Below are positions 7,745 to 31,666 of a DNA stretch of 64,000 nt, piece by piece. Location: the IMG/VR virus record IMGVR_UViG_3300017917_002434, positions 186,001 through 250,000 of that record; one strand, 5' to 3'. Position numbers and translations under genes: made by a program. The notes beneath the pieces were generated by a model that worked only from the letters and a program-made list of their open reading frames with translations, did no database searches and was not told the origin of the DNA. How positions within the stretch are numbered: the stretch's first letter is position 1; every line of letters starts with the position of its first letter.

Positions 7745-10700
7745 ATGGCAGAGTTTAAATTAGGTAGAATTAGGTTTATATGGAAAGGCGAATGGGCCGC
7801 GGGTACCTCTTACCTTAAAGATGACGTAGTCAGAGTAAACGGTAAAGTTTATATCTGCGTTATCGGACATACGGCAGATTCAAATTTTTATGTAGATGCG
7901 AATAATGTTCCCGCACGTTGGAATCAAGCCAGCGATGGCCAATCTTGGAGAGGTGACTGGACTGTTGACACTGAATATTTTGTCAACGATATCGTTAAAT
8001 ATGGCGGACAGTTATACATCTGTTTAGTAGGACACACATCGTCTGCTAACATCAACGACGGATTAGAAGTTGATCTAGATCTTGGCGACAGTACACAGAC
8101 TAAGTGGGATCAATTTGCCGAAGGTTTTGATTGGAAAGGCGACTGGACTACCAGCACCAGATACAAATTAAACGACATAGTCAAATACGGCGGCAATACA
8201 TATCTATGTAATCTAGGACATATCTCTGCTCCTACCGCAGCCATGGGATTAGAAGGTCTAGATAGAGTAACATCAGGACAAAAAGCAGACATTGACAAAT
8301 GGGATCAGTTCTCTGAAGCATTTGACTGGAAAGGTCCATGGACACCATCTACTCGATATAAAATCAATGATGTAGTTTCCTTCGGCGGAACTACTTATGT
8401 ATGTAATGAAGGACATCCTGCTGCTGCGACATTCGCCTTAGGTCTTGAAGCAGATCAGGGTAAGTGGGATTATTTTAATCAAGGTATTGAATATCTCGGT
8501 GCTTGGGACGCAGACGCACAAAATTATAAAGTAAACGATCTAGTTAAAAACGGCAACGGCGTTTATATCTGTTTACAAAAGCATACTTCAAGCCTCTCAA
8601 GAACCTTCGAACAAGATGAAGATTCTGGTTATTGGGCACAATTCTTAGAAGGATTACAATTTGAAGATAGTTGGAACACGTCTACTATCTATCAACCTGG
8701 CGACATAGTTACCTATGGTGGGTATGCTTATGTTGCCACAACTAACCACAGTAACATCAAACCTACACAGGCAGTAACCGGAGCCCAGAACTGGGATCTA
8801 TTCACCACAGCATTTAAATTCCAACAAGACTGGTCAGGAGTCACCGCATATAAAGTCGGCGATGTTGTAAGGCTCAGCGGATATACCTATGTAGCTATCG
8901 CAGATAATACTAATTTCAAACCACCTAATCTAACATATTGGGAACAATTAAATCCTGGTATACGCTGGTTAGGTGCTTGGGCCAATGGTTACGGATATGT
9001 GTTAGGTGACGCTGTACGTTACGGACCTAACAGTTATATCTGCGTTCTAGCACACACATCTGCTACAGCAACAAATAGACCGGATGTAGACATCTCAGGA
9101 ACATTTTGGAATCTATTAGCTAACGGTCAAGAATCGTCCGTGTTAACAACACAAGGCGATATCGTTTACTACGGTGGTGCCGGGCCTACAAGATTACCTA
9201 TAGGTTCAGACGGACAGGTTCTTGTCGTTAACAATGCTGCAGCACCCGAATGGAAATATTGGGGTGAAGTAGATCAACTCTATTATGTGAGCTTAGAAGG
9301 TACAGACGAGCCAGCACCTACATACGGTATTACATTAGACAAACCATGGAGAACCGTAAGATACGCTGCTGACCAGATAGAAAAAGGCACTAGAAATCCA
9401 GAAGCTGCCTATCTGCTAGAAATTAATAGACAATTTGTACAGCGTGAAACAGTTCAGTGGATTAACTATCAGATTACCAACAACATCGCTCCTTTTGTTT
9501 CGAGTTTTTCTTATAATACAACCAAGTGTGAGCGTGATGTTGGATTAATCATTGACGCTTTATTATGGGATATCCGCCACGGCGGTAACGTAAGATCTAG
9601 ACAGGCTGCTGTTGAATACGTAACAAACGCCTCAACATTCTACGGTCTAGGACAAAAAGAAGAAACAGTAGCAGCGATTAATTATGCTGTTGATACATTG
9701 ATCAATACCTGTGTACTACTTAACACAGCACCGGCAACAAATTATCAAGTCACTAACAGCGTTCCAGTCAATGACAGAATCTTACAGATTATCAATACAA
9801 ATTATGTTGCTGAAGATTCATCCTTTACAGAAATTACTAATCTAAAAACACTAATCAACACAGCTATATCGGGCGGTGCGTTAGTGAATGTAGGAGCTGA
9901 AGTAAAACCTCAGAGAACTATATTAGTTAAGACTGGTGTATTCTTTGAAACACTACCAATCATTGTGCCTGTAGATACTGCGGTTGTTGGCGACGAATTA
10001 AGATCTACTAATATCAGACCGGCTACTAGCCAGATCGATCCAACAGATGTTCCTAAAAGTGTTGCTGCTCTAGTATGGTTAGCAAGCGTTCTAGAGGCGG
10101 TTGTTACAGGAGTTACATTTAGTAAAACTACCACAGGGTCAAATCCAAATACACTAACACAGAGTCAAACGAAACCATTCGCTGACAGCTCAGTGGGTAA
10201 TGTTGTGAATTTGGTAGTGCAGAATGCTTACACTTACATTACGGACACTCTGATAATAGGCGGCCCATCAGGTATTACGTTTGTAGGAACAAACACTCCG
10301 GTTAGTGATTATGATACTTACGCAGCAGTAAGACAACTAGAACTTAACAGAGAATTTATCGTAGCAGAAATTCATGCTTATATTGCTGATACATATCCCG
10401 CATACACATATTCTTTAGCGGCTTGTGCTCGAGATATTAATGAATATATAGATGCGGCAAAATATGATTTAATTTATCCTGGCAATTATAGAACGTTAAC
10501 AGCAGCAAAATGGTATGTTAACGGCGTTACTGGTTCAGTAACTGAAAACATGTTCCTAGTTCGAAACAGCACAGGCGTTAGAAATATGACTGTCCAAGGC
10601 CTAACAGGAACACTAACTGGACCAAATTCTTATGGTACATATAGACCAACAGCTGGTGCTTATGTTTCTTTAGATCCAGGCTGGGGCCCTAACGATCAGC

Positions 10701-13700
10701 GTGTTTGGATTACTACAAGATCGTGTTATGTACAGAACGTAACTACATTCGGTACTGCCTGTATTGGTGCTAAGATCGATGGTGATCTACATGCCGGCGG
10801 TAATAAATCTATCGTTGCCAACGACTTTACACAGGTCCTCTCAGACGGAATCGGTGTATGGTGTACTAATCTCGGAAGAACAGAACTTGTTTCTGTATTC
10901 TCATACTACGGACATATTGGTTATCTAGCAGAAGACGGCGGTAAGATACGTGCTACTAACGGTAACAGCTCCTACGGTACATTTGGTTGTGTTGCTGAAG
11001 GCGTTGATGCTACAGAAACACCTATCACAGGCATAGTCAATAACAGATACGAAGAAGCACTGATTACTAAGGTTTTAACTAATACACAACAAGTCCTTCG
11101 TGTTGAATATCAAAATGCTGGTATTGATTATACCGCAGGTACATTTACATTCAACGGTCCAGGTACGTCATTTACCACAGTCGGTGATGAAAGAAGAGAC
11201 GGCGGAATTTTTGAAGTAAGACTGTTAGATAATGATGACAGTTCCGGACAATTTGGAGGACTTGACTATCTAAGTTCAGAAAACGTAGCACAGGCAGGTA
11301 CAACTACATCGATCACCTTAGCCGCTACAGACGACCAAACCAGTACTGCCTATATCGGTATGCGTATCTATATTCAATCAGGTGCTGGCGTAGGACAATA
11401 CGGGTATATTAATACCTATAACGCAGGATCTAAAGTAGCTGGCGTGTTTAAAGAATCAACAGGTACCGCAGGTTGGGACCATGTCGTACCAGGAACTACA
11501 ATAGTATCTCCTGATCCTTCATCATTGTATATAATCGAACCAAGAGTTACAGTAGCAGCACCGACAGAAAGTTCACCTGCTGTTACAGGTGGTCCCGCAG
11601 GCGGATCCTCAGATGCGGTCTATGCTAACGTAAGACAGACATTTACAGGTCTGTCAGCATCGGGCGGATCAGGAACTGGAGCAACATTTAACGTAACTAG
11701 AAGCGGTGAAACTTATACTGTTACATTAAATCAAGCAGGACAAAATTATACGAACGGAAATACCTTAACTATTCTTGGCACAGCGGTAGGCGGTGCTACA
11801 CCAGCCAACGATATCAGGATCAAAGTAGAAACTGTTGATTCTACTCCCGGATTGGTTGTAGGAGAAATATTAACATTTAGACACGAAGGCAAAGGACGCG
11901 GCGGTAATTTCGTACTGCTTCCAGTCGCATCTAGCAACGTCGGTTATTTTTCTACCAACGGTACAAGTTGGTCAACATCTACATTGCCAGCGACTGCTGT
12001 TTGGACATCTTTAGCAACAGGCGATATTAGCAATGTATCATATGTGGTAGCACTGGGTTCTACAGGAACTACAACTGCTGCTTATAGTATTGATGGTGGA
12101 GCAACATGGACCGGATCAAACTTACCCCAGACTAGTGCTGTAACTTCTGTAGCTTTTGGCGGGGGTAGATTTGTTGCCGTAAGATCAGATTCTGCTACGC
12201 CCTTAGTATCTACAAATGGTACTACATGGGCTAACGGTGCTAATCCTCTCCCAGGAGCAACTAATTGGCAGAGTATTACCTACGGAAAAGGTAGATTCTT
12301 TGCTGTGGCCACAGGCGGTACAGCATCTGCTTACAGCCTAGATGGAATTACCTGGACTGCTGCCGCACTACCATCATCGTCAACATGGAACAGCATAGCA
12401 TTTGGAAATAATATATTTGTAGCATTATCTGTAGCAGGTGTGCTGGCTATAAGCAATAACGGGACCAGCTGGACCGCAGTTTCCGGAACCATAACCGCTG
12501 ACGAAGTTGGATACGGACAAGGAACATTTGTTGCTACCAGCAATGGTACCGCAGCAGCACACTGGGATTCACAAGACGGATTGACTTGGACTCAAGGAAC
12601 TGCGACATTTGCTGCCACAGGAAGACCGGTATTTGGTAATCCTAATAGATCTCCATTGTGGGTGATTCCTCTCTCAGCTGCTACTCCTCAAGCACTAGTT
12701 ACAGGTACTAGAGCCTATGTACGTTGTAGAATCGCTGATACTAAGATAGTAGAATTCAGGGTAGTTGAGCCAGGTAGCGGTTACAGTTCTGTAACACCGC
12801 CGACATTGACTATTACAGATCCTAACAATACCTACGAAGCACCGTATACTGTGCGTGTCGGTAACGGTGTATTAGCTAATCCAACATTTGTTACCAGGGG
12901 TGCCGATTGGGAAGTCGCTACAGGAACCGTAGTCGGTGACGGTTACGCAGATATTTTCCAGAATGGCAATTACGTAGACGTCAGAGATCTGTATTCTATA
13001 CCAGTACCAGGTTCAAACGTTGAATTTTCAACATTGCCTGGACAGTTTTACAAACTGGTTACTGTGACACAGTTACTAGGTACAGGGCCTTACACAGCTA
13101 GATTACAGGTAAGTCCTCCGATAGAGATTCCTGAAGCTATGCCGCACGAGGATACTTTTGAAATTAGGATCCGTTATTCACAGGTTCGACTAACTGGTCA
13201 TGATTTCTTAGATATAGGAACAGGCAATTTTACCAGCACTAACTATCCAAATTTACCTTTAATAGATCCGATACCCGCCAACGAAACAGTAGAAAGCAAC
13301 GGCGGTCGTGTGTTCTATACATCAACTGACCAAGATGGCAACTTCCGAGTTGGTGGGTTGTTTACAGTTGAACAAAGTACGGGTACTGCTACACTGAACG
13401 CAGATGCGTTTAATATCGCAGGCCTACAAGAGCTCAGTTTGGGCTCGGTAGAATTGGGCACAGGGGGTGCTACAATCACTGAATTCTCAACGGATCCGTT
13501 CTTTACACAGAATTCAGATTCAGTTATACCTACGCAGAGAGCTATTAAAGCCTACATCAGTTCACAAATTGGTTCAGGCTCTAGTACGTTGAACGTAAAT
13601 ACTCTCACAGCAGGTCAGATATTTGTAGCTAATGACTTCATTACTACTACCACAGGGGGCAGAATCAACGTTCTAGCTCCGATGAATTTCATAGGTGGTA

Positions 13701-13744
13701 TTAATGGAGTGCCGGTGGCTATGAACTTATTTTTACATAGTTAA
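7745..13744 (+). CDS. Giant tail fibre/spike protein (1999 aa), paralogue of 2060..7702 with two inserted CxRD helical domains
   Basis: Same 8 CBM-like repeats; shared blocks 'GGNKSIVANDFTQ', 'YSQVRLTGHDFL.IGTGNFT', 'GGRVFYTSTDQDGNFRVG', 'PTQRAIK'. Confidence 0.75.
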   Translation: MAEFKLGRIRFIWKGEWAAGTSYLKDDVVRVNGKVYICVIGHTADSNFYVDANNVPARWNQASDGQSWRGDWTVDTEYFVNDIVKYGGQLYICLVGHTSSANINDGLEVDLDLGDSTQTKWDQFAEGFDWKGDWTTSTRYKLNDIVKYGGNTYLCNLGHISAPTAAMGLEGLDRVTSGQKADIDKWDQFSEAFDWKGPWTPSTRYKINDVVSFGGTTYVCNEGHPAAATFALGLEADQGKWDYFNQGIEYLGAWDADAQNYKVNDLVKNGNGVYICLQKHTSSLSRTFEQDEDSGYWAQFLEGLQFEDSWNTSTIYQPGDIVTYGGYAYVATTNHSNIKPTQAVTGAQNWDLFTTAFKFQQDWSGVTAYKVGDVVRLSGYTYVAIADNTNFKPPNLTYWEQLNPGIRWLGAWANGYGYVLGDAVRYGPNSYICVLAHTSATATNRPDVDISGTFWNLLANGQESSVLTTQGDIVYYGGAGPTRLPIGSDGQVLVVNNAAAPEWKYWGEVDQLYYVSLEGTDEPAPTYGITLDKPWRTVRYAADQIEKGTRNPEAAYLLEINRQFVQRETVQWINYQITNNIAPFVSSFSYNTTKCERDVGLIIDALLWDIRHGGNVRSRQAAVEYVTNASTFYGLGQKEETVAAINYAVDTLINTCVLLNTAPATNYQVTNSVPVNDRILQIINTNYVAEDSSFTEITNLKTLINTAISGGALVNVGAEVKPQRTILVKTGVFFETLPIIVPVDTAVVGDELRSTNIRPATSQIDPTDVPKSVAALVWLASVLEAVVTGVTFSKTTTGSNPNTLTQSQTKPFADSSVGNVVNLVVQNAYTYITDTLIIGGPSGITFVGTNTPVSDYDTYAAVRQLELNREFIVAEIHAYIADTYPAYTYSLAACARDINEYIDAAKYDLIYPGNYRTLTAAKWYVNGVTGSVTENMFLVRNSTGVRNMTVQGLTGTLTGPNSYGTYRPTAGAYVSLDPGWGPNDQRVWITTRSCYVQNVTTFGTACIGAKIDGDLHAGGNKSIVANDFTQVLSDGIGVWCTNLGRTELVSVFSYYGHIGYLAEDGGKIRATNGNSSYGTFGCVAEGVDATETPITGIVNNRYEEALITKVLTNTQQVLRVEYQNAGIDYTAGTFTFNGPGTSFTTVGDERRDGGIFEVRLLDNDDSSGQFGGLDYLSSENVAQAGTTTSITLAATDDQTSTAYIGMRIYIQSGAGVGQYGYINTYNAGSKVAGVFKESTGTAGWDHVVPGTTIVSPDPSSLYIIEPRVTVAAPTESSPAVTGGPAGGSSDAVYANVRQTFTGLSASGGSGTGATFNVTRSGETYTVTLNQAGQNYTNGNTLTILGTAVGGATPANDIRIKVETVDSTPGLVVGEILTFRHEGKGRGGNFVLLPVASSNVGYFSTNGTSWSTSTLPATAVWTSLATGDISNVSYVVALGSTGTTTAAYSIDGGATWTGSNLPQTSAVTSVAFGGGRFVAVRSDSATPLVSTNGTTWANGANPLPGATNWQSITYGKGRFFAVATGGTASAYSLDGITWTAAALPSSSTWNSIAFGNNIFVALSVAGVLAISNNGTSWTAVSGTITADEVGYGQGTFVATSNGTAAAHWDSQDGLTWTQGTATFAATGRPVFGNPNRSPLWVIPLSAATPQALVTGTRAYVRCRIADTKIVEFRVVEPGSGYSSVTPPTLTITDPNNTYEAPYTVRVGNGVLANPTFVTRGADWEVATGTVVGDGYADIFQNGNYVDVRDLYSIPVPGSNVEFSTLPGQFYKLVTVTQLLGTGPYTARLQVSPPIEIPEAMPHEDTFEIRIRYSQVRLTGHDFLDIGTGNFTSTNYPNLPLIDPIPANETVESNGGRVFYTSTDQDGNFRVGGLFTVEQSTGTATLNADAFNIAGLQELSLGSVELGTGGATITEFSTDPFFTQNSDSVIPTQRAIKAYISSQIGSGSSTLNVNTLTAGQIFVANDFITTTTGGRINVLAPMNFIGGINGVPVAMNLFLHS

Positions 13745-13757: not shown

Positions 13758-14078
13758 ATGCCAACAGGAAGATTAGGGGCTAGTGATGTCGCAGCAGCTT
13801 CAAATACCACAGTTTACACTGTGCCCTCAGATACTTTTTCGGTAGTTACACTGTCGATCTGTAATAGAGGAAATCAAGCGGTTGCTGTCAGAGTAGCGGT
13901 TTCTGCGGCTGCAACGCCTACAGCAGCAGAATGGATCGAATATGACACAGAAGTATTAGGCAAGGGTGTTTTAGAACGTACAGGTATTGTTATGGACGCA
14001 GGTAGATTGCTAGTAGTATATTCTAGCGGTGCTAACGTCAGTGCAGTAGCGTTCGGTATAGAAACACCAACAGCATAA
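13758..14078 (+). CDS. Small virion structural/adaptor protein (106 aa)
   Basis: GGAG SD; 'TTVYTVP....VVTLSICNR...VRVA' pattern of small T4-like fibre-associated proteins. Confidence 0.55.
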   Translation: MPTGRLGASDVAAASNTTVYTVPSDTFSVVTLSICNRGNQAVAVRVAVSAAATPTAAEWIEYDTEVLGKGVLERTGIVMDAGRLLVVYSSGANVSAVAFGIETPTA

Positions 14079-14101: not shown

Positions 14102-14434
14102 ATGGGACGATATATCACAACAACGGGCACAGCGAATAATGTTATTCGTGAAGTTTCTTCAGCCTTTAACGCTTCAGTCAATGATCGAATTTTAGCCAAC
14201 AGTTCGGGGGGTGCTTTTACTATCACTCTACCTAACATAGCTACATTATTGCTCAACGATACGATACAGATTATCGACATCGGTGGTGTAGCAGCAACAA
14301 ATAATATCACAGTTGCTAGAAATGGTTCTAAAATCCAAAACATCAACGACGATTTAACTATCGACGTTAATGGATCGATCATTACTCTAGTTTACACTGG
14401 CACGACCTATGGCTGGGTAGTAGCATCAGCTTAA
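14102..14434 (+). CDS. Stand-alone gp34-like proximal tail fibre repeat domain protein (110 aa)
   Basis: 'ANSSGGAFTITLP....NDTIQIIDIGG.AATNNITVARNGSKI....DLTI......TLVY.....GW' matches the repeat seen in T4 gp34-like fibres. Confidence 0.6.
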   Translation: MGRYITTTGTANNVIREVSSAFNASVNDRILANSSGGAFTITLPNIATLLLNDTIQIIDIGGVAATNNITVARNGSKIQNINDDLTIDVNGSIITLVYTGTTYGWVVASA

Positions 14435-14455
14435 TGAAACGACACAGGAAGGAAC

Positions 14456-15424
14456 ATGCCTACATCATTTAGAAATTTAGTACAGATCAAAGGAGATGCT
14501 GTTTACGCTACAGAAGAACATCTAGAGCGTGGCAGGATCTGGGTCTATACTCCAGGCAATAACTATACCAACTACCAGATATGTTGGCGTGCTCCGGCGA
14601 GAGGTACTGCCGTTATAGAAATATGGGGTGCCGGAGGATCCGGTGCTCGTATGTGCTGCTGCGGGGGCGGACTTCCTGGTAACGCAGGTGCTTATGCGAA
14701 AAGAACTATCAGAGTAGAACCAAATTGTTATATCTGCGGAGCAGTAGGATTTAGCTGCGGTAACGCAGATGCTATCTGTTTTAGAGGCTGCTCAGATCCA
14801 ACTGGTGTAACATGGACAGGTAACTGCGGTGCTTCGGGCTGTATGTGTGCCCAAGGTGGTGCCGGCGGACGTTCATTCTGTACTACAGGCACATCACTTT
14901 ATTGTTGTTTCGCAGCTAACGGCTATTGTGCTCGTGGACCGTACAATGATAACTGTGGTACGATCTGTAACTACTTTGGTGGAATATGGATCGCCTGTGC
15001 CTATGGCGGAGACATCAATCGCTGCGGCGGATTTAGTTGTACAGCATTTTTAGGCTGTCAAGGTCCTTGTATCTGTTCATATACATACCACGTAGCAACA
15101 CCACCGGGATATGTTTCCAAGTGCGGCGGAGTCGTAGTATTTGGAACAGAAAACAATAACGAATTTTCAAACTGGTCAGGGCAAGGTGCCCACCAGCATC
15201 AATCAGCACTGAACGCACAGTCTCGACAACCAACACACGGCGTCCCATGGTCGTATTGCTGGGGATTTGGTGGAGGCTGCGGCTGTTACGAGAACGAAGG
15301 ATGCTATCCTAGCGTTGGACCTGGATATCCAGGTACACCACCGAATCCGTGTCCTGAAGTCAGAGATCACGGACGCCGGGGCGGTCACGGTGCTATCAGA
15401 ATTAGATTTATAGAGGGACAATAA
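14456..15424 (+). CDS. Cys/Gly-rich fibre-associated protein, paralogue 1 (322 aa, 30 Cys)
   Basis: Gly-rich phage tail domain frame 'IEIWGAGGSG...GN.GAY.K.TI' ... 'GG.GAIRIRF' with a CCC motif; Cys counted by hand. Confidence 0.65.
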   Translation: MPTSFRNLVQIKGDAVYATEEHLERGRIWVYTPGNNYTNYQICWRAPARGTAVIEIWGAGGSGARMCCCGGGLPGNAGAYAKRTIRVEPNCYICGAVGFSCGNADAICFRGCSDPTGVTWTGNCGASGCMCAQGGAGGRSFCTTGTSLYCCFAANGYCARGPYNDNCGTICNYFGGIWIACAYGGDINRCGGFSCTAFLGCQGPCICSYTYHVATPPGYVSKCGGVVVFGTENNNEFSNWSGQGAHQHQSALNAQSRQPTHGVPWSYCWGFGGGCGCYENEGCYPSVGPGYPGTPPNPCPEVRDHGRRGGHGAIRIRFIEGQ

Positions 15425-15425
15425 G

Positions 15426-16421
15426 ATGCCAACATCATTTAAAGGTCTCGTTCAAGCAAAGTTGCCCTTTATCGCGTTTGAAGAAGAAAACTTAGAGCAA
15501 GGACGTATTTGGGCCTATACACACGGTAATGTTCGTACTAAGATGTGCGGTGAAGTGTGTTGGATCGCACCCGCTAACGGTGTGGCTACTATCGAGATCT
15601 GGGGTGCTGGCGGAAGTGGTGCTAAAATGTGCTGCTGTGGCGGCGGTATTCCGGGAAATCCAGGTGCGTATTCACGAAGAACTATATGTGTAGCTACAGG
15701 ATGTTTAATCACAGGGACTATTGGTTTTAGTTGCGGTAACTCGAACGATCTATGCTTCCGAGGCTGCTCCGAACCAACTGGAGTATGCTGGCGTTCGACT
15801 ACAACCAACGGCTGTATGTGTGCCCAAGGCGGTCGTGGAGGCACTACATATTGTTCTACAGGAACTTCCTTATATTGCTGTTTTACTGCTGCTGGTTTTT
15901 GTTCGACTGGTCCTTTTAATGCTAACTGCGGAATTATATGTAATTTTGGAACCGGTACTGCTTCATGCTGTGCTGAGGGGTTCGGTGGAGACGTTAATGT
16001 CCGAGGCGGATTCAGCCGTGCTACTTTCTTTGGTTGTACTCCTAGCTGTCCTTGTTCAACGATTTACCACGTGGCAACACCACCGGGTTATTATTCAGAC
16101 TGCGGTGCTGAAATAACATATACTAATGAGAGCGATAGTGGACATTCAAGCTGGAGTGGTATGGCGTTAAACGGATTCCTTTATGGACTTAACGTAGCAG
16201 GCCGCCAACCAGGACGAGGTGTTGACGCTGCTCACTCATGCTGGACCGGCGGTAGAACCTGCGGATGTTACGATGGACAAGGATGTATTCCTTTTGTTCC
16301 GCCAGGATTTCCAGGATTACCGGCGTTTCCTTGCCCAGATGTTCGAGATCATGCTTTCCGAGGTGGACACGGTGCTATCCGCATTCGATTCGTACAAGAC
16401 GGTACAGTAAGAGATTTATAA
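15426..16421 (+). CDS. Cys/Gly-rich fibre-associated protein, paralogue 2 (331 aa, 30 Cys)
   Basis: Same MPTSF start and WGAGGSGA.MCCCGGG, CFRGCS.PTGV, YHVA.P.G, CP.VRDH motifs. Confidence 0.65.
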   Translation: MPTSFKGLVQAKLPFIAFEEENLEQGRIWAYTHGNVRTKMCGEVCWIAPANGVATIEIWGAGGSGAKMCCCGGGIPGNPGAYSRRTICVATGCLITGTIGFSCGNSNDLCFRGCSEPTGVCWRSTTTNGCMCAQGGRGGTTYCSTGTSLYCCFTAAGFCSTGPFNANCGIICNFGTGTASCCAEGFGGDVNVRGGFSRATFFGCTPSCPCSTIYHVATPPGYYSDCGAEITYTNESDSGHSSWSGMALNGFLYGLNVAGRQPGRGVDAAHSCWTGGRTCGCYDGQGCIPFVPPGFPGLPAFPCPDVRDHAFRGGHGAIRIRFVQDGTVRDL

Positions 16422-16432
16422 GAGATAATATA

Positions 16433-17401
16433 ATGCCTACATCGTTTCAAAATTTAGTAAGATCTAGAACAACTGGTCGAGTAGAGGAAAACCTAGAAAC
16501 AGGTAGAATCTATGTGTTTACTCCCGGTACTATGTATACCAATTTCTGTAACGGATTTTGCTGGAATCCTCCGGCGACAGGAAGAGCAGTAATTGAGGTA
16601 TGGGGTGCTGGTGGGTCTGGAGCACAGATGTGCTGCTGCGGTGGAGGTACTCCAGGTAATGCAGGTGCGTATTCAAAGAAAACTATTTGTGTTAGCACCA
16701 ACGACTTTGTAAGAGGTAGTATTGGTAACAGTTGTGGTAATAGTTCTGCTTTATGTTTCCGTGGATGTTCAGATCCTACAGGAGTATGTTGGACTCAATG
16801 TGCTGCTACTCAAAACGGTTGTATCTGCTCTCAAGGCGGAGCAGGCGGCCGCGGTATGTGTTCCACAGGAACTTCATTGTTCTGTTGCTTTGTAAACCAA
16901 AGTCATTGCTTTACAGGACCATTTAACGATAACTGCGGCATTATCTGTAATTACTTCAACGGTATATGGATTGCCTGTGCGTTCGGCGGTGATGTCAACT
17001 GCTGCGGACACTTTAGTTGCTCAGTATTTTTCGGCTGTCAACCACAATGCCCATGTTGCTTCCAATATCACGTAGCTTCGCCGGCAGGATTTTATAGTTG
17101 TGGACCATACAACGTAGCAGCATTTGGTGCTGAGGACGATAATAGACACAGTAACTGGTCCGGTCAACCATTAATGCAAGAAACTAGTGCGTTCTCAGCA
17201 ATGCGTAGATCACCAACAGCAGGTATTCCGATGAATTATTGCTGGAGATCAGATAGAAAATGCGGATGCTACGAGATGCAGGGTTGTATACATTACGCAC
17301 CACCAGCAACGGGCGGATATCCAACAAGCCCATGTCCAGGTGTTCGCGATCATGCTGGTCGTGGAGGCTGGGGTGCTGTTAGAATTAGATTCTTTACATA
17401 A
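16433..17401 (+). CDS. Cys/Gly-rich fibre-associated protein, paralogue 3 (322 aa, 33 Cys)
   Basis: Start moved from 16265 to the ATG at 16433 because MPTSF matches the N-termini of both paralogues and removes the overlap. Confidence 0.65.
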   Translation: MPTSFQNLVRSRTTGRVEENLETGRIYVFTPGTMYTNFCNGFCWNPPATGRAVIEVWGAGGSGAQMCCCGGGTPGNAGAYSKKTICVSTNDFVRGSIGNSCGNSSALCFRGCSDPTGVCWTQCAATQNGCICSQGGAGGRGMCSTGTSLFCCFVNQSHCFTGPFNDNCGIICNYFNGIWIACAFGGDVNCCGHFSCSVFFGCQPQCPCCFQYHVASPAGFYSCGPYNVAAFGAEDDNRHSNWSGQPLMQETSAFSAMRRSPTAGIPMNYCWRSDRKCGCYEMQGCIHYAPPATGGYPTSPCPGVRDHAGRGGWGAVRIRFFT

Positions 17402-17404
17402 ATA
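17399..17404 (+). promoter_or_regulatory. Late promoter core (TAAATA)
   Basis: caTAAATA over the stop codon; GAGG SD before ATG 17421. Confidence 0.55.
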
Positions 17405-17420: not shown

Positions 17421-18068
17421 ATGAGAAAAAATTTTACATTTTTATTACCAGATGAGCCATATAAAAATACCACAGCTCTAAACAAGGTACAGAATGCGGT
17501 CTATACTGGACCTCGTTATCTTGCTATCTGTGTTATCGATGCTACGGGTGAAATCAAGTATGTTGCTAGACGAGGCGAAAGTTTAGCTGAAATCAATTTC
17601 GAGTCGCTAGTTGATGATGACCCAGCAACAACATTTTATCTAATCGATGCCAGCGAACATCCATTTGCCGCAGCTTACTTGTTACATACTTATGAAACAG
17701 GCGATGTCCCTGATTATTCGGTAGATTTAGTCGATGCTGACGGCAACGAATGGAATTATACATATCATTACGACGACGGTACTGGTTCTATTGGACAATG
17801 TTTTTATGGACAGAGTCTAAAATACATTAACAATCAGTTCGTAGGACCAGAATACAGATTACACGCTATTACCAAAGAAAGTCTTATCCAAAATTATAAA
17901 AATATCGCTGTAGCGATCGAACAAAGTTTACAGGTTAATGACTATACAGATGCCGATCGCGAAGCTCTAACAGAGCATGTAGCATGGCTACGTGATCTAG
18001 AGAGAAGATACGCAGGTATCGATCATTGGAAAATTCCATTTCCAAATAATGTTCCAACAATGATTTAA
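17421..18068 (+). CDS. Hypothetical protein (215 aa), possible tail-fibre assembly chaperone
   Basis: Follows the Cys-rich trio; C-terminal 'EAL..H.AWLRDL....W..PFP' resembles the '(Y/W)RQ.LRDL...FP' end of phage tail assembly chaperones (weak). Confidence 0.4.
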   Translation: MRKNFTFLLPDEPYKNTTALNKVQNAVYTGPRYLAICVIDATGEIKYVARRGESLAEINFESLVDDDPATTFYLIDASEHPFAAAYLLHTYETGDVPDYSVDLVDADGNEWNYTYHYDDGTGSIGQCFYGQSLKYINNQFVGPEYRLHAITKESLIQNYKNIAVAIEQSLQVNDYTDADREALTEHVAWLRDLERRYAGIDHWKIPFPNNVPTMI

Positions 18069-18069
18069 A

Positions 18070-18150: not shown

Positions 18151-19092
18151 ATGGAACAACGCTCTAAAGCATTTTTTCTAAACGGCGGAGCAGGCCGTAT
18201 GATTTGTGCTATCCCTGCTTTTGAAAAATACGAACAAGAGTCTGGCGATAAAGACTTTATTATCATCTGCGAAGGCGGAACAGATGTATTCAAAGGACAC
18301 CCGACCCTTGATGCTAGAACCTATGATATCTGGCACAAACACCTTTTTAAAGAAAAGATCAAAGATCGAGATATCGTAAGTCCGGAACCTTATCGCATCT
18401 GGGAATACTATAACCAGAAATGTTCTATAGCACAGGCGTTCGATATCGAAATTAACAGAAAAGGTATTCGGAGCCTTCCCAAACCTACATTAATCTTAAG
18501 CAAGGATGAATTGCTTACTGGTCGCAAACTTATCAACGATGTTAAAAAACAACTAAAAAAGAATAAAATAGTTATCTTCCAACCGTTTGGTAGAGGTATT
18601 CAAGTTATCGATGATACCCCTATAGATTCAACTAGCCGTAGTATTGAATTTAAAGATGTAAAGGCTTTAATCAAAAAATTACAAGAAAAAGATTTTGGTG
18701 TAGTTTTAATGAGTGAGTTTAAGATAGATTTTACTGATGAAAAATTCAAAGATGAAATCGCTATGCCAGAAAATGTAACTATGCGTCAGTGGGCCGCAAT
18801 TATCAAATATGCTGATCATTTTTTAGGCTGCGACAGTTTAGGGCAACATCTAGCATATTGTGTAGATAAACCTGCTACAGTGTTGTTCGGATCAACATAT
18901 CCTATTAATGTGTCGTATCCAGATTGTAAATCATTTACTATCCTAGACATGGGTGAAGATTTACGTGAATATAGTCCTATCAGAATTACCATGGATGAAC
19001 GCATTGATAGAAAACACGAACCTATAATGACAATGACTCCAGAAATACAAAATTACGTTGTAGAAGCCGTACAAGGGAAACATAAAAAATGA
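18151..19092 (+). CDS. Glycosyltransferase family 9 (ADP-heptose heptosyltransferase-like)
   Basis: N-terminal 'GGAGRMICAIPA' and C-terminal GT9 signature 'WAAIIKYADHFLGCDSLGQHLAYCVDKPATVLFGST.P' (cf. DSG..HLA.A...P...LFG.T). Confidence 0.7.
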   Translation: MEQRSKAFFLNGGAGRMICAIPAFEKYEQESGDKDFIIICEGGTDVFKGHPTLDARTYDIWHKHLFKEKIKDRDIVSPEPYRIWEYYNQKCSIAQAFDIEINRKGIRSLPKPTLILSKDELLTGRKLINDVKKQLKKNKIVIFQPFGRGIQVIDDTPIDSTSRSIEFKDVKALIKKLQEKDFGVVLMSEFKIDFTDEKFKDEIAMPENVTMRQWAAIIKYADHFLGCDSLGQHLAYCVDKPATVLFGSTYPINVSYPDCKSFTILDMGEDLREYSPIRITMDERIDRKHEPIMTMTPEIQNYVVEAVQGKHKK

Positions 19093-20897
19093 CAGAACCT
19101 AAACTTAATTCTGGCTGGATAGCAGCCATAGCACGTGGGCATAATGCCGGTGTGTGTCTTTTTAAGGATGGAGAAGTAGTATTTTCTATAGAAGAAGAAA
19201 GATTAACACGACAAAAATATGACGGCGGCCCTTTAGCATCGATGGTTAAAATTTTAGAGTACACAGATAAATTAGACTATCTAGTTATCGCACATACTCA
19301 AAAACTACAAGACACTGCCGGACGCATCGATTACAGCGGTGATGATATGTACACAGGTCTAGCTAGAAAACTAGGCCTAATTAGCAGAAAAGAAAATAAT
19401 TTCAACCATCCGCAGGTAGTTGATTTAAGTTTTATGCATCATAAGCTACATGCTGCCTGTGCTTTTTATCGATCAGGGTTTGACGATGCTGTCGCACTGA
19501 TTGTAGACGGTGCTGGGACATTCATCCAATTGATGTATGGCAACGAACCGTTATGGGTTTGGGAAATTGAATCTATCATCGACTGCGATTATCCGTCGCA
19601 GTTTACGACTCTTTATAAAAATTATGGTGCTCGTGAACCAATCGCTGGCACATACATGGACAAGTGCCCGTCGGATCAGTTCGGTGAAGCTGGAAAATTC
19701 CACGAAGCATGGCTTTCGGATAGAGCAGGTATAGTTAAAACCTACGAGGCTGTCACCGAATATTGTGGGTTCTCGGCTATCGAAGCAGGGAAAACCATGG
19801 GATTATTTCCCTATGGTAAACCTAACGATAAAATTCCTAAGTTGTTCGATTTTACTTCGAAGGTTCCGTTGTCTAATAGGAATCTAATCGTGCCTGCCTA
19901 TCCATCTTCTTCTATAGTTAACAGTGCTTTGTTTGACTATCTAGATGAAGTACCTGTAGAAGGTGAAGATGTTACTAAATTACAGAGTCGTAGAGACCTA
20001 GCCTACGCTTGCCAGACTCAAACACAAGAACAGGTAGTTCGTTTAATTCGTAAAGCAGTTGAAATAAGCGGAAAGAAGAATGTAGTAATCAGCGGAGGCT
20101 ACGGATTAAATTGTGTAGCAAATTATCATTATCTAGAACAGCTAAAAGATGAAGGCATCAAGATTTATGTTGAGCCTATCAGTAATGATGCTGGTACTGC
20201 TATGGGTGCTGGAATGATGTTCTGGAGAGCTTTGTCGGATAGCAGAGAAAAACAAAAATTGGATACTCTGTATCTAGGTCCTGAGTATACATATTCTGAT
20301 AGAGAAATCCAAGAAAAAGTTAATTATGCTGGCGGAGAAGTTGTAGATGCTACTAATAAAGATGTTGTAAAACTACTCCGTGAAAAGAACATTGTGACGA
20401 TCTTTCAAGGCCGTTCAGAAAATGGTCCACGTGCTCTAGGAAACCGTTCTGTGCTGTTTGACCCAACATTCGAAGACGGTAAAGATTTTGTCAATACTGT
20501 AAAACGTAGAGAGTATTTCCGCCCATTTGCCGGTAGTATTATACACGATCACGTACATGATTGGTTCGATCTCAGAGGCATGGACGAAACCCCCCATATG
20601 ATGTACGCTGTAAATTGTAAGCCCGGGGTAGCAGAAAAAATTCCTAGTATTATACATGTCGACGGCACATGTAGAATACAGAGTGTAAAACGTGATCAAA
20701 ATCCTCACTACTACGATCTTATCAAAGAATTCTACGATCAAACAGGAATTCCTATCATTTTTAACACCAGCTTTAATCTAGGCGGCGATCCACTAGTTGA
20801 AACGCTAGACGATGCTATCGAGACATTGGTTAAGAGTGATATCGAGTATCTGTTTTTACCTGAATACGGTAAGCTGATCAAGATCGCTAATAGCTAA
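19089..20897 (+). CDS. O-carbamoyltransferase, NodU/CmcH/TobZ family
   Basis: Motifs EEERLTRQK, HH..HA..AFY, VDGAG, GKTMGL.PYG, SGG..LNCVAN, DAGTA.GA, GRSE.GPRALGNRS, KRRE.FRPFA, HVDGTCR.Q, NTSFN; ATGA overlap with the GT9 stop. Confidence 0.93.
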   Translation: MTEPKLNSGWIAAIARGHNAGVCLFKDGEVVFSIEEERLTRQKYDGGPLASMVKILEYTDKLDYLVIAHTQKLQDTAGRIDYSGDDMYTGLARKLGLISRKENNFNHPQVVDLSFMHHKLHAACAFYRSGFDDAVALIVDGAGTFIQLMYGNEPLWVWEIESIIDCDYPSQFTTLYKNYGAREPIAGTYMDKCPSDQFGEAGKFHEAWLSDRAGIVKTYEAVTEYCGFSAIEAGKTMGLFPYGKPNDKIPKLFDFTSKVPLSNRNLIVPAYPSSSIVNSALFDYLDEVPVEGEDVTKLQSRRDLAYACQTQTQEQVVRLIRKAVEISGKKNVVISGGYGLNCVANYHYLEQLKDEGIKIYVEPISNDAGTAMGAGMMFWRALSDSREKQKLDTLYLGPEYTYSDREIQEKVNYAGGEVVDATNKDVVKLLREKNIVTIFQGRSENGPRALGNRSVLFDPTFEDGKDFVNTVKRREYFRPFAGSIIHDHVHDWFDLRGMDETPHMMYAVNCKPGVAEKIPSIIHVDGTCRIQSVKRDQNPHYYDLIKEFYDQTGIPIIFNTSFNLGGDPLVETLDDAIETLVKSDIEYLFLPEYGKLIKIANS

Positions 20898-20898: not shown

Positions 20899-20923
20899 AA
20901 AACCCCCGTTTTAGGGGGTTTTT
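20899..20923 (+). terminator. Rho-independent terminator (possibly bidirectional)
   Basis: aaaaccccc-gtttta-gggggttttt immediately after the carbamoyltransferase stop. Confidence 0.8.
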
Positions 20924-31236: not shown

Positions 31237-31264
31237 TTGACAATCAGACTTTTTGCTGTATAAT
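31237..31264 (+). promoter_or_regulatory. sigma70 consensus (early) promoter of the heptose operon
   Basis: TTGACA (31237-31242), 16 nt, TATAAT (31259-31264); predicted +1 at about 31271, the ATG. Confidence 0.8.
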
Positions 31265-31270
31265 TACAGC

Positions 31271-31666
31271 ATGAGTCTGATTTTTGTTAACGGTTCTTTT
31301 GATATACTTCATCCAGGACACATCGAACTGCTAAACTATGCCAAAAGTTTAGGATCTCATCTCATGGTTGCCATAGATTCGGACGCTAGAATTACTAGTT
31401 TAAAAGGACCGACTCGGCCTATTAACAATCAACGTTATAGAGCGTTCATGTTAAAAAATCTTAGAGCAGTGGACGAAGTAGTAATTTTTGATTCTGACCA
31501 AGAATTAATAAACTTGATCGCTGCCTGTGATATAATGGTAAAAGGCAGCGACTATATGGGTAAACCTATCGTAGGCGAAGAAGTCTGCGATGAAATTATA
31601 TTTTTTGATAGATTATATGACTATTCAACAACAAAAATCATTCAAGATATTGTTAATCGGAGATGA
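31271..31666 (+). CDS. hldC: D-glycero-beta-D-manno-heptose 1-phosphate adenylyltransferase (RfaE domain II)
   Basis: 'NGSFDILHPGH' (HxGH), 'DSD..I..LKG..RPIN', 'VKGSDY', 'YSTT.II'; start moved to ATG 31271. Confidence 0.85.
   Translation: MSLIFVNGSFDILHPGHIELLNYAKSLGSHLMVAIDSDARITSLKGPTRPINNQRYRAFMLKNLRAVDEVVIFDSDQELINLIAACDIMVKGSDYMGKPIVGEEVCDEIIFFDRLYDYSTTKIIQDIVNRR

What the first reader, a model, noticed from the sequence alone, without database searches (positions are those of the whole stretch)
14456..17401. Three tandem, equal-length Cys-packed paralogues: candidate heterotrimeric metal- or disulfide-rich fibre tip
Seen: 322/331/322 aa proteins with 30/30/33 Cys, identical MPTSF starts, shared MCCCGGG, SCGN...CFRGCS, C.C.QGG, CC, C..IC, YHVA, C.CY...GC and CP.VRDH motifs on a Gly-rich tail domain scaffold; preceded by a gp34-like repeat protein and followed by a chaperone-like ORF and the GT9/carbamoyltransferase pair. 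Known: phage fibres are trimers and assemble in a reducing cytoplasm. Inference: exactly three diverged copies may form one heterotrimer (about 90 thiols) holding Zn/Fe or cross-linking after lysis, or be alternative adhesins; they are also the nearest candidate substrates for the adjacent modifying enzymes.
Basis: partly seen in the sequence, partly recalled or inferred. Interest (0 to 1): 0.72.

Follow-up and report, generated by a model that had tools for sequence, protein, structure and literature searches.

The report
Cysteine-packed triple tail-fibre tip genes
Three neighbouring, cysteine-packed genes of a large freshwater phage encode the receptor-binding tips of a tail fibre (the fold solved in cyanophage Pam3), and the same uncharacterised three-gene cassette, always beside sugar- and carbamoyl-transferring enzymes, also sits in cultured ocean cyanophages where it could now be tested.

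Summary
Three tandem paralogues lie at 14456-15424, 15426-16421 and 16433-17401. They are 322/331/322 aa, carry 30/30/33 Cys and are 57-61% identical. Their Cys content is 9-10%, against 1% for the genome.

A confident AlphaFold model matches the TNF-like plus glycine-rich-domain tail fibre gp24 of cyanophage Pam3 (Z 15.3). It also matches the Bxb1 tail tip and the ALK/LTK glycine-rich domain. So these are distal fibre or adhesin subunits of a known fold, in a Cys-rich form with no Pfam or NCBIfam model.

About 24 Cys columns are at least 85% conserved in 343 relatives.

One cassette recurs in 70+ metagenomic phage loci and in cultured cyanophages S-CAM1/3, S-SSM7 and P-SSM2. Its order is fibre, 106-aa ORF, 110-aa ORF, Cys-rich copies, 215-aa chaperone-like ORF, GT9-like transferase, carbamoyltransferase.

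Copy number is usually 3, sometimes 2 or 1, never more. Copies keep position-specific clades and 1-nt spacers. An A+B+C trimer is predicted with ipSAE 0.89 (best control 0.02), but this cannot separate a heterotrimer from three homotrimers.

Whether the thiols form disulfides or bind metal is unresolved. Even and odd Cys counts are equally common, and Cys co-loss between columns is weak.

Verdict: a new variant of a known kind, of moderately high interest.

The parts
7745..13744 (+). 1999-aa fibre or shaft protein with six N-terminal CBM_5_12-type repeats. It is the large structural protein directly upstream of the cassette.
   Evidence: Pfam CBM_5_12 E 4e-40, 6 stretches. A homologue sits upstream of the cassette in most loci. 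The equivalent gene is annotated 'tail fiber protein' in S-CAM3, S-SSM7 and P-SSM2.
13758..14078 (+). 106-aa conserved small protein, a candidate fibre adaptor.
   Evidence: PHROG phrog_11338 'tail fiber protein' E 5e-11. Present before the Cys-rich genes in every 2- or 3-copy locus. Homologous to S-CAM3 gp160 (E 6e-29). P-SSM2 has a 106-aa ORF at the same position.
14102..14434 (+). 110-aa conserved small protein, a candidate fibre adaptor or connector.
   Evidence: Matches internal parts of large tail or tail-fibre PHROGs (phrog_4302, 9648, 972). Syntenic in all 2- or 3-copy loci. Homologous to S-CAM3 gp159 (E 4e-23).
14456..15424 (+). Copy A: 322 aa, 30 Cys. TNF-like plus glycine-rich-domain fibre-tip subunit.
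   Evidence: AF2 model pLDDT 86.7, pTM 0.86. Pam3 gp24 Z 15.3. Position-1 clade in the tree.
15426..16421 (+). Copy B: 331 aa, 30 Cys. Paralogue, 1 nt after A.
   Evidence: Position-2 clade. Exact short pieces occur in a metatranscriptome assembly.
16433..17401 (+). Copy C: 322 aa, 33 Cys. Paralogue, 11 nt after B. The true start is 16433, not the ORF ATG at 16265.
   Evidence: Position-3 clade.
17421..18068 (+). 215-aa candidate tail-fibre assembly chaperone, with an N-terminal beta domain, a C-terminal helical hairpin and a conserved DHWKIPFP end.
   Evidence: AF2 pLDDT 96.3. AFDB clusters named 'Phage tail assembly chaperone-like domain' at E 1e-6, TM 0.65/0.53. Always directly after the Cys-rich genes. 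Weak homology to S-CAM3 gp155. No match to a solved structure.
18151..19092 (+). GT9-like (heptosyltransferase-like) glycosyltransferase.
   Evidence: Pfam Glyco_transf_9 E 8e-5, 22.4 bits against cut-off 22. Weak NCBIfam heptosyltransferase III and RfaQ hits. E 1e-109 to S-CAM3 gp154 and S-SSM7_120.
19089..20897 (+). NodU/CmcH-type carbamoyltransferase, overlapping the GT9-like gene by 4 nt.
   Evidence: Pfam Carbam_trans_C E 1e-56 and Carbam_trans_N E 1e-27. 62% identical to S-SSM7 and 50% to S-CAM3 carbamoyltransferases.
20899..20922 (+). Terminator-like GC hairpin with a T run, 2 nt after the carbamoyltransferase stop. Probable end of the transcription unit.
   Evidence: Best-scoring terminator-like site in 7000-24000 (9 pairs, 5 GC). 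This is a consensus match only.
31253..34115 (+). Five sugar-nucleotide genes: cytidylyl/adenylyltransferase-like, PfkB kinase, cupin, NT5C/HAD-like phosphatase, NAD epimerase. Together they resemble an ADP-heptose-type pathway and could supply the donor for the GT9-like enzyme.
   Evidence: Pfam hits. The equivalent genes lie next to the carbamoyltransferase in P-SSM2, S-CAM3 and S-SSM7.

Best explanation
A, B and C are the distal, receptor-binding subunits of a tail fibre.

Each has three parts:
- a short N-terminal amphipathic helix (M-P/A-T/S-L/F-x-x-L-L/V), inferred to dock and bundle the chains;
- a TNF-like beta-sandwich;
- a glycine-rich domain of the kind solved in cyanophage Pam3 gp24, the Bxb1 tail tip and the ALK/LTK ectodomain.

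The chains assemble into a trimer with help from the 215-aa protein encoded just downstream, which would be a Tfa/gp25-type chaperone. The trimer is then mounted on the long CBM5/12-repeat fibre through the two small conserved proteins encoded just upstream.

I favour one A:B:C heterotrimer per fibre tip (about 0.45) over three separate homotrimers (about 0.40).

The roughly 24 conserved Cys per chain lie in or next to the glycine-rich strands (CCCGGG, SCGN, CxCxQGG, GGGCGC). I think they most likely staple the tightly packed lattice and the trimer interface as disulfides once the virion is in oxic water (about 0.5). A metal-thiolate role is the alternative (about 0.25).

The cassette is co-transcribed with a GT9-like transferase and a carbamoyltransferase, which may decorate the fibre.

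Shown: the genes, Cys conservation, fold, synteny, copy-number distribution and the predicted trimer. Inferred: virion location, heterotrimer, thiol chemistry, chaperone role and glycosylation.
For: Fold:
- The AF2 model of A has pLDDT 86.7 and pTM 0.86.
[quoted passage not shown] It gives Z 12.0 to the Bxb1 tail tip and 7.5-10.5 to ALK/LTK glycine-rich domains. The next unrelated hit is at 4.5.
- Foldseek agrees in PDB, AFDB and BFVD: 'Glycine-rich domain-containing', 'minor tail', 'tail fiber', and S-CAM3 at TM 0.62-0.65.
- 2 of 69 relatives hit Pfam PF21722 Gly_rich_2.

Precedent. Pam3 gp24 is an N-terminal helix plus TNF-like plus glycine-rich homotrimer that needs the downstream chaperone gp25 at 3:3 (PMC9608196). 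Pam3 virions carry functional disulfides that tie fibres to the baseplate, and DTT releases them (PMC9942802).

Context. Flanking proteins hit tail-fibre PHROGs. The order fibre-106-110-[Cys-rich x2-3]-215-GT9-CarbT is conserved in every 2- or 3-copy locus and in S-CAM3, S-SSM7 and P-SSM2.

Trimer. Complex prediction of A+B+C scored ipSAE 0.89 in three runs, with best control 0.02. That mark was reached by 58 of 80 solved complexes and 2 of 110 mismatched pairs.

Heterotrimer hints:
- Copy number is 3 in 60 of 79 loci, 2 in 14, 1 in 5, and never above 3.
- Copies form position-specific clades with conserved order.
- The median spacer between copies is 1 nt (n=134).
- There is one chaperone gene and one adaptor pair for all copies.
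- The predicted interface regions (residues 14-42 and 208-293) are where the paralogues differ most. The three paralogues share a consensus residue in 38% of interface columns against 66% elsewhere.

Cys. About 24 columns are at least 85% Cys in 343 sequences. There are five weak co-loss pairs: 91-180, 181-205, 43-112, 101-195, 41-190.
Against: - No virion proteomics covers these proteins. Published cyanophage virion proteomes are for S-SM1, S-PM2 and Syn9, and Syn9 has no match to the family profile.
- Every phage fibre characterised so far is, to my knowledge, a homotrimer.
- One-copy lineages show that a single gene suffices. P-SSM2 has two copies separated by the chaperone-like gene.
- The complex predictor also scores close cousins of a true partner highly, so ABC versus AAA/BBB/CCC is untested.
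- Only one strict position-specific (type-II) column was found.
- Cys counts are even in 176 and odd in 167 sequences, and pair covariation is weak (maximum phi 0.55). That is not what a fully paired intramolecular disulfide protein would show.
- No Erv1 (PF04777) or thioredoxin (PF00085) family gene was found in the held 270 kb. The Erv1 search also found nothing in any control genome, so only the thioredoxin result is informative.
- The 215-aa protein has no match to any solved chaperone.
- The window proteins themselves do not reach any Pfam or NCBIfam model.
Confidence: 0.5

Rival explanations
1. Three alternative adhesins. A, B and C each form their own homotrimer of the same Pam3-like fold. 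The three homotrimers share a docking helix and cap different fibres, or different baseplate sites, on one virion. This would give one phage three receptor specificities.
For: The solved relative Pam3 gp24 is a homotrimer. One-copy lineages exist. P-SSM2 has two copies separated by the chaperone-like gene. Jumbo myoviruses commonly carry several fibre types (my own knowledge). The paralogues have diverged to 57-61% identity, with variable regions and, in some lineages, insertions in only one copy. The in-silico trimer does not discriminate.
Against: No locus among 79 has more than three copies. Order and position-specific clades are retained over deep divergence, which is unusual for freely shuffling host-range genes. 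The 1-nt spacers suggest equimolar synthesis. There is a single chaperone and a single adaptor pair. With near-identical N-terminal helices, chains made together would be expected to mix unless something prevented it (inference).
Confidence: 0.4
2. Metal-thiolate fibre tip. The conserved Cys (CCC, CC, CxC, CxxxC) coordinate Zn, Fe or Cu ions, possibly on the three-fold axis. The metal would stabilise the tip or serve in host recognition. This is analogous to the His-bound Fe and Zn of T4 gp37 and gp12.
For: The motifs are metallothionein-like (CxC, CC) and not paired. There is no even-number bias in Cys counts (176 against 167) and pair covariation is weak. Folding takes place in a reducing cytoplasm, and no thioredoxin-family gene was found in the held 270 kb (the Erv1 search also found nothing in any control genome, so it shows nothing). 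Conserved Cys 275 and 283, and the equivalents of Cys 268 in B and C, fall in the predicted trimer interface. Metal ions on fibre axes are known in T4 (my own knowledge).
Against: There are no CxxC motifs typical of Zn-ribbon or Fe-S sites (sequence). The protein has a defined beta/polyglycine fold with many aromatic residues, unlike metallothioneins. Nothing here measures metal. Pam3 shows that cyanophage virions do use disulfides. Variable Cys positions are replaced mainly by polar surface-type residues, which suggests many are exposed and not in clusters.
Confidence: 0.25
3. The cassette is not a virion part. The Cys-rich proteins and the sugar and carbamoyl enzymes would act inside or on the infected cell, for example by remodelling the cell surface to block superinfection, as proposed for cyanophage 'LPS genes'.
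For: Sullivan et al. 2010 treat the heptose and carbamoyl genes as LPS genes of unknown role. There is no proteomic proof of virion location.
Against: The fold matches fibre-tip proteins solved in virions. The genes sit between tail-fibre genes on both sides, with tail-fibre PHROG hits for the flanking small ORFs. There is no signal-peptide-like N-terminus; instead there is a conserved amphipathic helix.
Confidence: 0.05

Closest known systems
Cyanophage Pam3 tail fibre gp24 with chaperone gp25 (PDB 7YPX, 7YFW; PMC9608196, PMC9942802)
   Same: TNF-like beta-sandwich followed by a glycine-rich domain (Z 15.3, 193 residues, rmsd 3.2, 19% identity). An N-terminal helix. A trimer. A chaperone-like gene directly downstream. 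Cysteine and disulfide chemistry matters in that virion too.
   Different: Pam3 has one gene, a homotrimer, and a long two-helix N-terminal domain. Only Cys28 of Pam3 gp24 is reported in a disulfide, the link from fibre to wedge. Here there are up to three paralogues, a helix of only about 10 residues, about 24 conserved Cys per chain embedded in the glycine-rich motifs, two extra adaptor ORFs, and linked GT9-like and carbamoyltransferase genes. The 215-aa ORF shows no detectable structural match to gp25.
Pfam PF21722 Gly_rich_2 / 'glycine-rich domain-containing' phage tail proteins, including the mycobacteriophage Bxb1 tail-tip chains (PDB 9D93 Qa/Qb)
   Same: The same domain superfamily by fold (Z 12.0 to 9D93_Qb; many AFDB and BFVD hits). 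2 of 69 relatives reach the Pfam model.
   Different: The usual members carry the domain at the C-terminus of a longer fibre or minor tail protein. Here the domain is a stand-alone protein of about 320 aa in which runs such as GGGGGGG have become CCCGGG. The window proteins do not hit the Pfam model.
ALK/LTK extracellular TNF-like plus glycine-rich (TG/GRD) domain
   Same: The same two-part fold (Z 7.5-10.5).
   Different: An animal receptor ectodomain that binds a cytokine. There is no functional relation. It is useful only as the structural archetype of the polyglycine-II lattice.
C1q A/B/C and other TNF-fold heterotrimers (lymphotoxin alpha1beta2). Analogy only, from my own knowledge.
   Same: Three tandemly encoded paralogues with a TNF-like head that could assemble 1:1:1. 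Copy number is capped at the oligomer order.
   Different: No homology is claimed, and the heterotrimer here is unproven.
T2/S16-type gp38 adhesin (polyglycine-II sandwich at the tip of gp37)
   Same: A small separate protein with glycine-rich motifs that caps a long fibre and binds the receptor. The Pam3 authors note the structural resemblance.
   Different: gp38 is a monomer with a different middle domain. It did not appear among the listed Foldseek or VIA matches. It is not Cys-rich.

Membership tests
TNF-like + glycine-rich-domain phage fibre tips (Pam3 gp24 type; Pfam PF21722 Gly_rich_2) | Two-part fold: a TNF-like beta-sandwich carrying a lattice of extended glycine-rich strands | tested here: met
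   AF2 model pLDDT 86.7. Z 15.3 to 7YPX_A over residues 25-322, against chain residues 77-278. Z 12.0 to 9D93_Qb. Z 7.5-10.5 to ALK/LTK. The next hit is at 4.5. Foldseek E 9e-6.
TNF-like + glycine-rich-domain phage fibre tips (Pam3 gp24 type; Pfam PF21722 Gly_rich_2) | Sequence match to the Pfam Gly_rich_2 profile | tested here: inconclusive
   A, B and C have no Pfam hit at E<=0.1. 2 of 69 family members hit PF21722, best E 1.4e-5. ESM Atlas neighbour clusters carry PF21722 in 32-47% of members.
TNF-like + glycine-rich-domain phage fibre tips (Pam3 gp24 type; Pfam PF21722 Gly_rich_2) | Glycine-rich motifs of the GGGGxGG type | tested here: met
   GAGGSG, CCCGGG, QGGAGG, GGGCGC and RGGHG are present in all three copies. 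G58, G61 and G309 are invariant in 69 relatives. The motifs are partly replaced by Cys, which is the variant feature.
TNF-like + glycine-rich-domain phage fibre tips (Pam3 gp24 type; Pfam PF21722 Gly_rich_2) | Trimeric assembly | tested here: inconclusive
   The predicted A+B+C trimer scores ipSAE 0.89 against a best control of 0.02 (58 of 80 solved complexes and 2 of 110 mismatched pairs reach the mark). This is a prediction only, and homotrimers were not compared.
TNF-like + glycine-rich-domain phage fibre tips (Pam3 gp24 type; Pfam PF21722 Gly_rich_2) | Part of the virion, at the distal end of a fibre | not testable with these tools
   Only context is available: tail-fibre PHROG hits for the flanking ORFs and fibre genes on both sides. 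Published virion proteomes do not cover phages with the cassette.
Tfa / Pam3 gp25-type tail-fibre assembly chaperone (for the 215-aa ORF) | Encoded directly downstream of the fibre gene; an N-terminal beta domain that binds the fibre plus a C-terminal helical trimerisation domain | tested here: inconclusive
   The position is conserved in all 2- or 3-copy loci. The model (pLDDT 96.3) has a beta domain followed by helices 152-172 and 177-191. AFDB clusters named 'Phage tail assembly chaperone-like domain' match at E 1e-6. No solved chaperone matches. Only 1 of 41 relatives hits Caudo_TAP, weakly at E 0.005.
Metallothionein-like metal-thiolate proteins | Cys in CxC/CC/CxxC clusters that bind metal, few aromatic residues, no stable fold without metal | tested here: not met
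   CxC, CC and CCC motifs are present, but the protein has a confident beta/polyglycine fold and many Trp, Tyr and Phe residues. Metal binding itself cannot be tested here. Failing membership does not exclude a metal site.
Glycosyltransferase family 9 (heptosyltransferases), for 18151-19092 | Match to PF01075 above the gathering score | tested here: inconclusive
   22.4 bits against a cut-off of 22, covering only the C-terminal part. NCBIfam heptosyltransferase III and RfaQ hits are far below their cut-offs. ADP-heptose-type genes lie nearby.

The most novel reading that the evidence does not exclude
The three genes encode an obligate 1:1:1 heterotrimeric receptor-binding tip. To my knowledge this would be the first heterotrimeric phage tail fibre, and a viral analogue of C1q. 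Its polyglycine lattice would be stapled by dozens of disulfides or a metal-thiolate cluster. It would also be the true substrate of the co-transcribed GT9-like and carbamoyltransferase enzymes. In that case the long-puzzling 'LPS gene clusters' of P-SSM2/S-SSM7-type cyanophages would be virion-glycosylation genes, not host-surface genes.
Probability: 0.15. Interest if true: 0.85.

Novelty: new variant of a known kind. Interest (0 to 1): 0.64.

Why it matters
Receptor-binding tips decide which cells a phage can kill. This family is widespread in freshwater and marine phages: 481 proteins in the 90%-identity cluster search and 174 clusters at 50% identity. It occurs in cultured Synechococcus and Prochlorococcus phages, yet it is annotated only as 'hypothetical protein' and has no Pfam or NCBIfam model.

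It combines three features that are unusual for a fibre:
- up to three conserved tandem paralogues, possibly forming a heterotrimer;
- about 24 conserved cysteines per 320-aa chain, in proteins that fold in a reducing cytoplasm;
- an invariant genetic link to a chaperone-like gene, a GT9-like transferase, a carbamoyltransferase and ADP-heptose-type genes.

The third feature gives a concrete, testable role for the 'LPS genes' whose function in cyanophages has been open since 2005-2010. Because S-CAM1, S-CAM3, S-SSM7 and P-SSM2 are in culture, virion mass spectrometry, DTT sensitivity and cryo-EM could settle the questions directly.

The cassette is also shared between a PA5oct-like jumbo backbone and the Kyanoviridae. 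That is a clear case of host-recognition module exchange, and it hints that this uncultured freshwater jumbo phage may infect picocyanobacteria.

Tried and rejected
- tblastn of A and B against 50,697 phage records gave no match. This turned out to be a sensitivity or low-complexity-filter problem. The carbamoyltransferase led to S-CAM3 and S-SSM7, and tblastn with S-CAM3 gp156 then found the cultured relatives.
- Pfam, NCBIfam and a PDB sequence profile found nothing for the window proteins.
- A search for strict position-specific (type-II) residues as a heterotrimer signature found only one column, A-position 270 with G/T/R. This gives no statistical support.
- Concerted evolution of the N-terminal helix within genomes is only marginal (identity ratio 1.07 against 0.85-0.96 elsewhere).
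- Cys covariation to map disulfide pairs gave only five weak candidate pairs.
- I had no access to model coordinates, so Cys-Cys distances could not be measured.
- Searches of the held 270 kb for Erv1-type oxidase, thioredoxin and psbA were all negative. The genome is about 76% complete, and the Erv1 control matched nowhere, so these negatives are weak.
- The T4 late-promoter motif TATAAATA is not enriched.
- The 215-aa ORF gave no convincing match against solved structures.
I removed those rows and did not send them elsewhere.
- RNA-library contigs gave only short pieces of B and C. That is weak evidence of transcription, because DNA carry-over cannot be excluded.

Full report
1. The observation

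The three ORFs exist as described.
- A: 14456-15424, 322 aa, 30 Cys, 58 Gly.
- B: 15426-16421, 331 aa, 30 Cys.
- C: 16433-17401, 322 aa, 33 Cys.

They are 57-61% identical to one another. The mechanical ORF for C starts at an upstream ATG (16265) that overlaps B. The real start is at 16433, 11 nt after the stop of B. A and B are 1 nt apart.

The window is bases 186001-250000 of a 269,730-bp IMG/VR virus record that CheckV puts at 76% complete. Across 255 ORFs of that record the Cys fraction is 0.98%. These proteins are at 9.3-10% and are the most Cys-rich in the genome.

2. How widespread the family is

A word-indexed search of 5.8 billion proteins found 481 relatives. An exhaustive HMMER search of 1.84 billion cluster representatives found 174 clusters at 50% identity. 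Full-length members are stand-alone proteins of about 310-360 aa with no name. Neither Pfam nor NCBIfam has a model that the window proteins reach. PHROGs places them in phrog_4205, 'unknown function'.

In 343 distinct full-length relatives, about 24 alignment columns are at least 85% Cys. In A numbering these are 43, 67-69, 101, 108, 112, 129, 131, 142, 150, 151, 158, 167, 171, 195, 201, 205, 207, 268, 275, 277, 283 and 299. About 16 further columns are Cys in 10-70% of sequences. At those variable columns the alternatives are mostly polar or charged residues (T, S, R, N, Q, D), which suggests exposed positions.

3. What they are

An AlphaFold2 model of A, built on a 69-sequence alignment, is confident (pLDDT 86.7, pTM 0.86). 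Matches to solved structures:

| Target | Score |
|---|---|
| Cyanophage Pam3 fibre (7YPX, 7YFW) | Foldseek best PDB match, E 9e-6; VIA-align Z 15.3 over 193 residues, rmsd 3.2 |
| Mycobacteriophage Bxb1 tail tip | Z 12.0 |
| ALK/LTK 'TG'/GRD ectodomain | Z 7.5-10.5 |
| Next unrelated hit | Z 4.5 |

[quoted passage not shown] AFDB and BFVD hits are named 'glycine-rich domain-containing protein', 'minor tail protein' and 'tail fiber'. The best viral hit is an uncharacterised S-CAM3 protein at TM 0.62-0.65. Two of the 69 relatives reach Pfam PF21722 Gly_rich_2.

The proteins therefore belong, by fold, to the TNF-like plus glycine-rich-domain class of phage fibre tips. What is new is the Cys load. 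Typical glycine runs appear here as CCCGGG, SCGN, CxCxQGG and GGGCGC.

The Pam3 papers give the functional template. [quoted passage not shown] It forms a homotrimer and needs the downstream chaperone gp25 at a 3:3 ratio (PMC9608196). Pam3 fibres are tied to the baseplate by disulfides that DTT breaks (PMC9942802).

4. The cassette

I fetched 79 IMG/VR loci and scanned them with an HMM of the three copies and with the neighbouring window proteins.

Every locus with two or three copies has the same order: large fibre protein, 106-aa ORF, 110-aa ORF, Cys-rich copies, 215-aa ORF, GT9-like gene, carbamoyltransferase, 524-aa protein, 191-aa protein, 2693-aa protein.

The two small upstream ORFs hit tail-fibre PHROGs. 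A strong terminator-like hairpin sits 2 nt after the carbamoyltransferase stop, at 20899-20922, so the genes are probably one transcription unit.

The carbamoyltransferase led to cultured cyanomyoviruses: 62% identity to S-SSM7 and 50% to S-CAM3. Their annotated records show the same cassette:

| Phage | Cassette |
|---|---|
| S-CAM3 | gp160 (106 aa), gp159 (108 aa), gp158/157/156 (329/302/300 aa; 36/35/24 Cys), gp155, gp154 (GT9-like), gp153 (carbamoyltransferase) |
| S-SSM7 | three genes of about 262 aa with 28-30 Cys |
| P-SSM2 | two genes of about 355 aa with 36 Cys each, separated by the 225-aa chaperone-like gene, then the GT9-like gene, carbamoyltransferase and heptose genes |

S-CAM1, Sf-FS3 and S-SSM6a also have relatives. 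The family profile hits S-CAM3 three times and P-SSM2 once (the 355-aa ORF PSSM2_306). It does not hit Syn9.

The backbone of the window's phage is different. Its terminase is closest to the jumbo phages PA5oct, Phosso and Atu_ph07, at 48-53% identity. So the cassette is a module shared across unrelated myovirus lineages.

5. Copy number and orthology

Of the 79 loci, 60 have three copies, 14 have two and 5 have one. None has more than three.

A maximum-likelihood tree of 157 distinct copies shows position-specific clades. The label 'first of three' needs only 2 changes on the tree, against 38.5 in shuffles. The triplication is therefore old and its order is retained. One deep lineage has its own arrangement, so orthology is not perfectly simple.

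Spacers between copies have a median of 1 nt (n=134).

The one-copy loci lack the 215-aa ORF, the GT9-like gene and the carbamoyltransferase, but keep a 106-aa-like ORF upstream.

Copy number is not fixed at three, but neither does it vary freely.

6. Trimer

It scored ipSAE 0.89 in all three runs, and the best control scored 0.02. That mark was reached by 58 of 80 solved complexes and 2 of 110 mismatched pairs, and those counts hold only roughly because I supplied my own alignments.

The interface uses residues 14-42, about 208-293 and the last strand. It includes conserved Cys 275 and 283 of A, and their equivalents in C. These interface regions are where the paralogues differ most. The three share a consensus residue in 38% of interface columns against 66% elsewhere, and the within-genome to between-genome identity ratio is 0.85-0.87 against 0.95-0.96 elsewhere.

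The tool warns that close cousins of a true partner also score well. The result therefore supports 'these chains trimerise', not 'they must be a heterotrimer'. Only one strict position-specific column was found.

I weigh the evidence as follows.
- For a heterotrimer: the cap at three, retained order, tight coupling, a single chaperone and a single adaptor pair.
- Against: the prior that known fibres are homotrimers, and the existence of one- and two-copy lineages.
- My estimate: heterotrimer about 0.45, three homotrimers about 0.40.

7. The cysteines

Nothing here measures thiol state.
- Arguments for disulfides: the Pam3 precedent; Cys sit in or beside the extended glycine-rich strands, which pack about 5 Å apart in Pam3, a spacing that suits cross-strand disulfides (inference); and there are five weak co-loss pairs.
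- Arguments against a fully paired scheme: 176 sequences have an even Cys count and 167 an odd one; the maximum phi is 0.55; and no thioredoxin-family gene was found in the held part of the genome (the Erv1 search also found nothing in any control genome and is uninformative).
- Arguments for metal: CxC, CC and CCC motifs; the parity result; and interface Cys that could meet on the three-fold axis.
- Arguments against metal: no CxxC motifs, and a defined, aromatic-rich fold.
- My estimate: disulfides about 0.5, metal about 0.25, the remainder mixed or neither.

8. The 215-aa ORF

Its model is very confident (pLDDT 96.3). It has an N-terminal beta domain and a C-terminal helical hairpin, the same two-module plan as Pam3 gp25 and TfaMu.

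AFDB clusters named 'Phage tail assembly chaperone-like domain' match at E 1e-6. No solved structure matches. Only one relative weakly hits Caudo_TAP.

'Chaperone' is therefore a reasonable inference that has not been shown.

9. Modifying enzymes

The GT9-like hit is marginal. However, five sugar-nucleotide genes lie at 31253-34115: an adenylyl/cytidylyltransferase-like gene, a PfkB kinase, a cupin, an NT5C-like phosphatase and an epimerase. Their counterparts directly follow the carbamoyltransferase in P-SSM2, S-CAM3 and S-SSM7.

Sullivan et al. 2010 called these 'LPS genes' of unknown function. Their invariant linkage to the fibre-tip genes in two unrelated phage backbones suggests that the fibre, not the host LPS, may be the substrate. 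That is an inference, and it is testable by mass spectrometry of virions.

10. Ecology and expression

Near-identical sequence occurs in pond, freshwater, aquaculture and lagoon metagenomes from at least nine studies. Two metatranscriptome assemblies hold short pieces of B and C, exact or with one mismatch. That is weak evidence of transcription.

11. Verdict

The fibre-tip reading is well supported. The heterotrimer is plausible but open, and the thiol chemistry is open.

This is a new variant of a known kind (glycine-rich-domain fibre tips). The family is uncharacterised, widespread, and accessible in cultured cyanophages.

Noticed in passing
window 31253-34115: Five consecutive sugar-nucleotide genes: cytidylyl/adenylyltransferase-like, PfkB kinase, cupin (annotated 'cysteine dioxygenase' in cyanophage records), NT5C/HAD-like phosphatase and NAD epimerase. 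Together they resemble an ADP-heptose pathway. The same set directly follows the carbamoyltransferase in P-SSM2, S-CAM3 and S-SSM7, where it has been called an 'LPS gene cluster' of unknown role.
   Followed up: partly
window 2060-7702 and 7745-13744: Both giant proteins (1880 and 1999 aa) start with six CBM_5_12-type carbohydrate-binding repeats (E 7e-48 and 4e-40). No test of gp34 homology was made.
   Followed up: partly
window 47386-48972 versus 14456-20897: The backbone and the fibre cassette have different affinities. The terminase is closest to the jumbo phages PA5oct, Phosso and Atu_ph07 (48-53%). The fibre-tip cassette and the carbamoyltransferase are closest to Synechococcus and Prochlorococcus myoviruses (up to 62%). 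This points to module exchange and hints that this uncultured freshwater jumbo phage (about 355 kb expected) might infect picocyanobacteria. No psbA was found in the held 270 kb.
   Followed up: partly
L031-L082 group, middle copy (e.g. L033:8755-9990); L074:12027-13496: In one deep lineage only the middle copy carries an insertion of about 80 aa (394-416 aa in total). In L074 only the third copy is enlarged (490 aa). An insertion in one of the three chains would make an asymmetric tip if the chains form a heterotrimer.
   Followed up: no
window 20970-22544: A 524-aa protein with runs of 7-9 Gly (GGGGGGG) between repeat blocks, and a C-terminal 120 aa that matches tail-fibre PHROGs (phrog_6427, phrog_19602). 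It has no Pfam hit and may be another fibre component with a C-terminal assembly domain.
   Followed up: no
window 39202-39627 (- strand): A 141-aa ORF with 9 Cys (6.4%), the next most Cys-rich ORF in the genome after the three fibre-tip genes. It lies between tail genes. I did not check whether it is a real gene.
   Followed up: no
window 20899-20922: A strong terminator-like hairpin (AAAACCCCC...GGGGGTTTT) 2 nt after the carbamoyltransferase stop. It suggests that the fibre-tip genes, the chaperone-like ORF, the GT9-like gene and the carbamoyltransferase end as one transcript.
   Followed up: partly
window 16265-16432: The upstream in-frame ATG gives a 378-aa ORF for copy C that overlaps copy B by 157 nt. 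Automatic gene callers may therefore mis-start this gene. Homologues all start at the MPTSF-type Met.
   Followed up: yes
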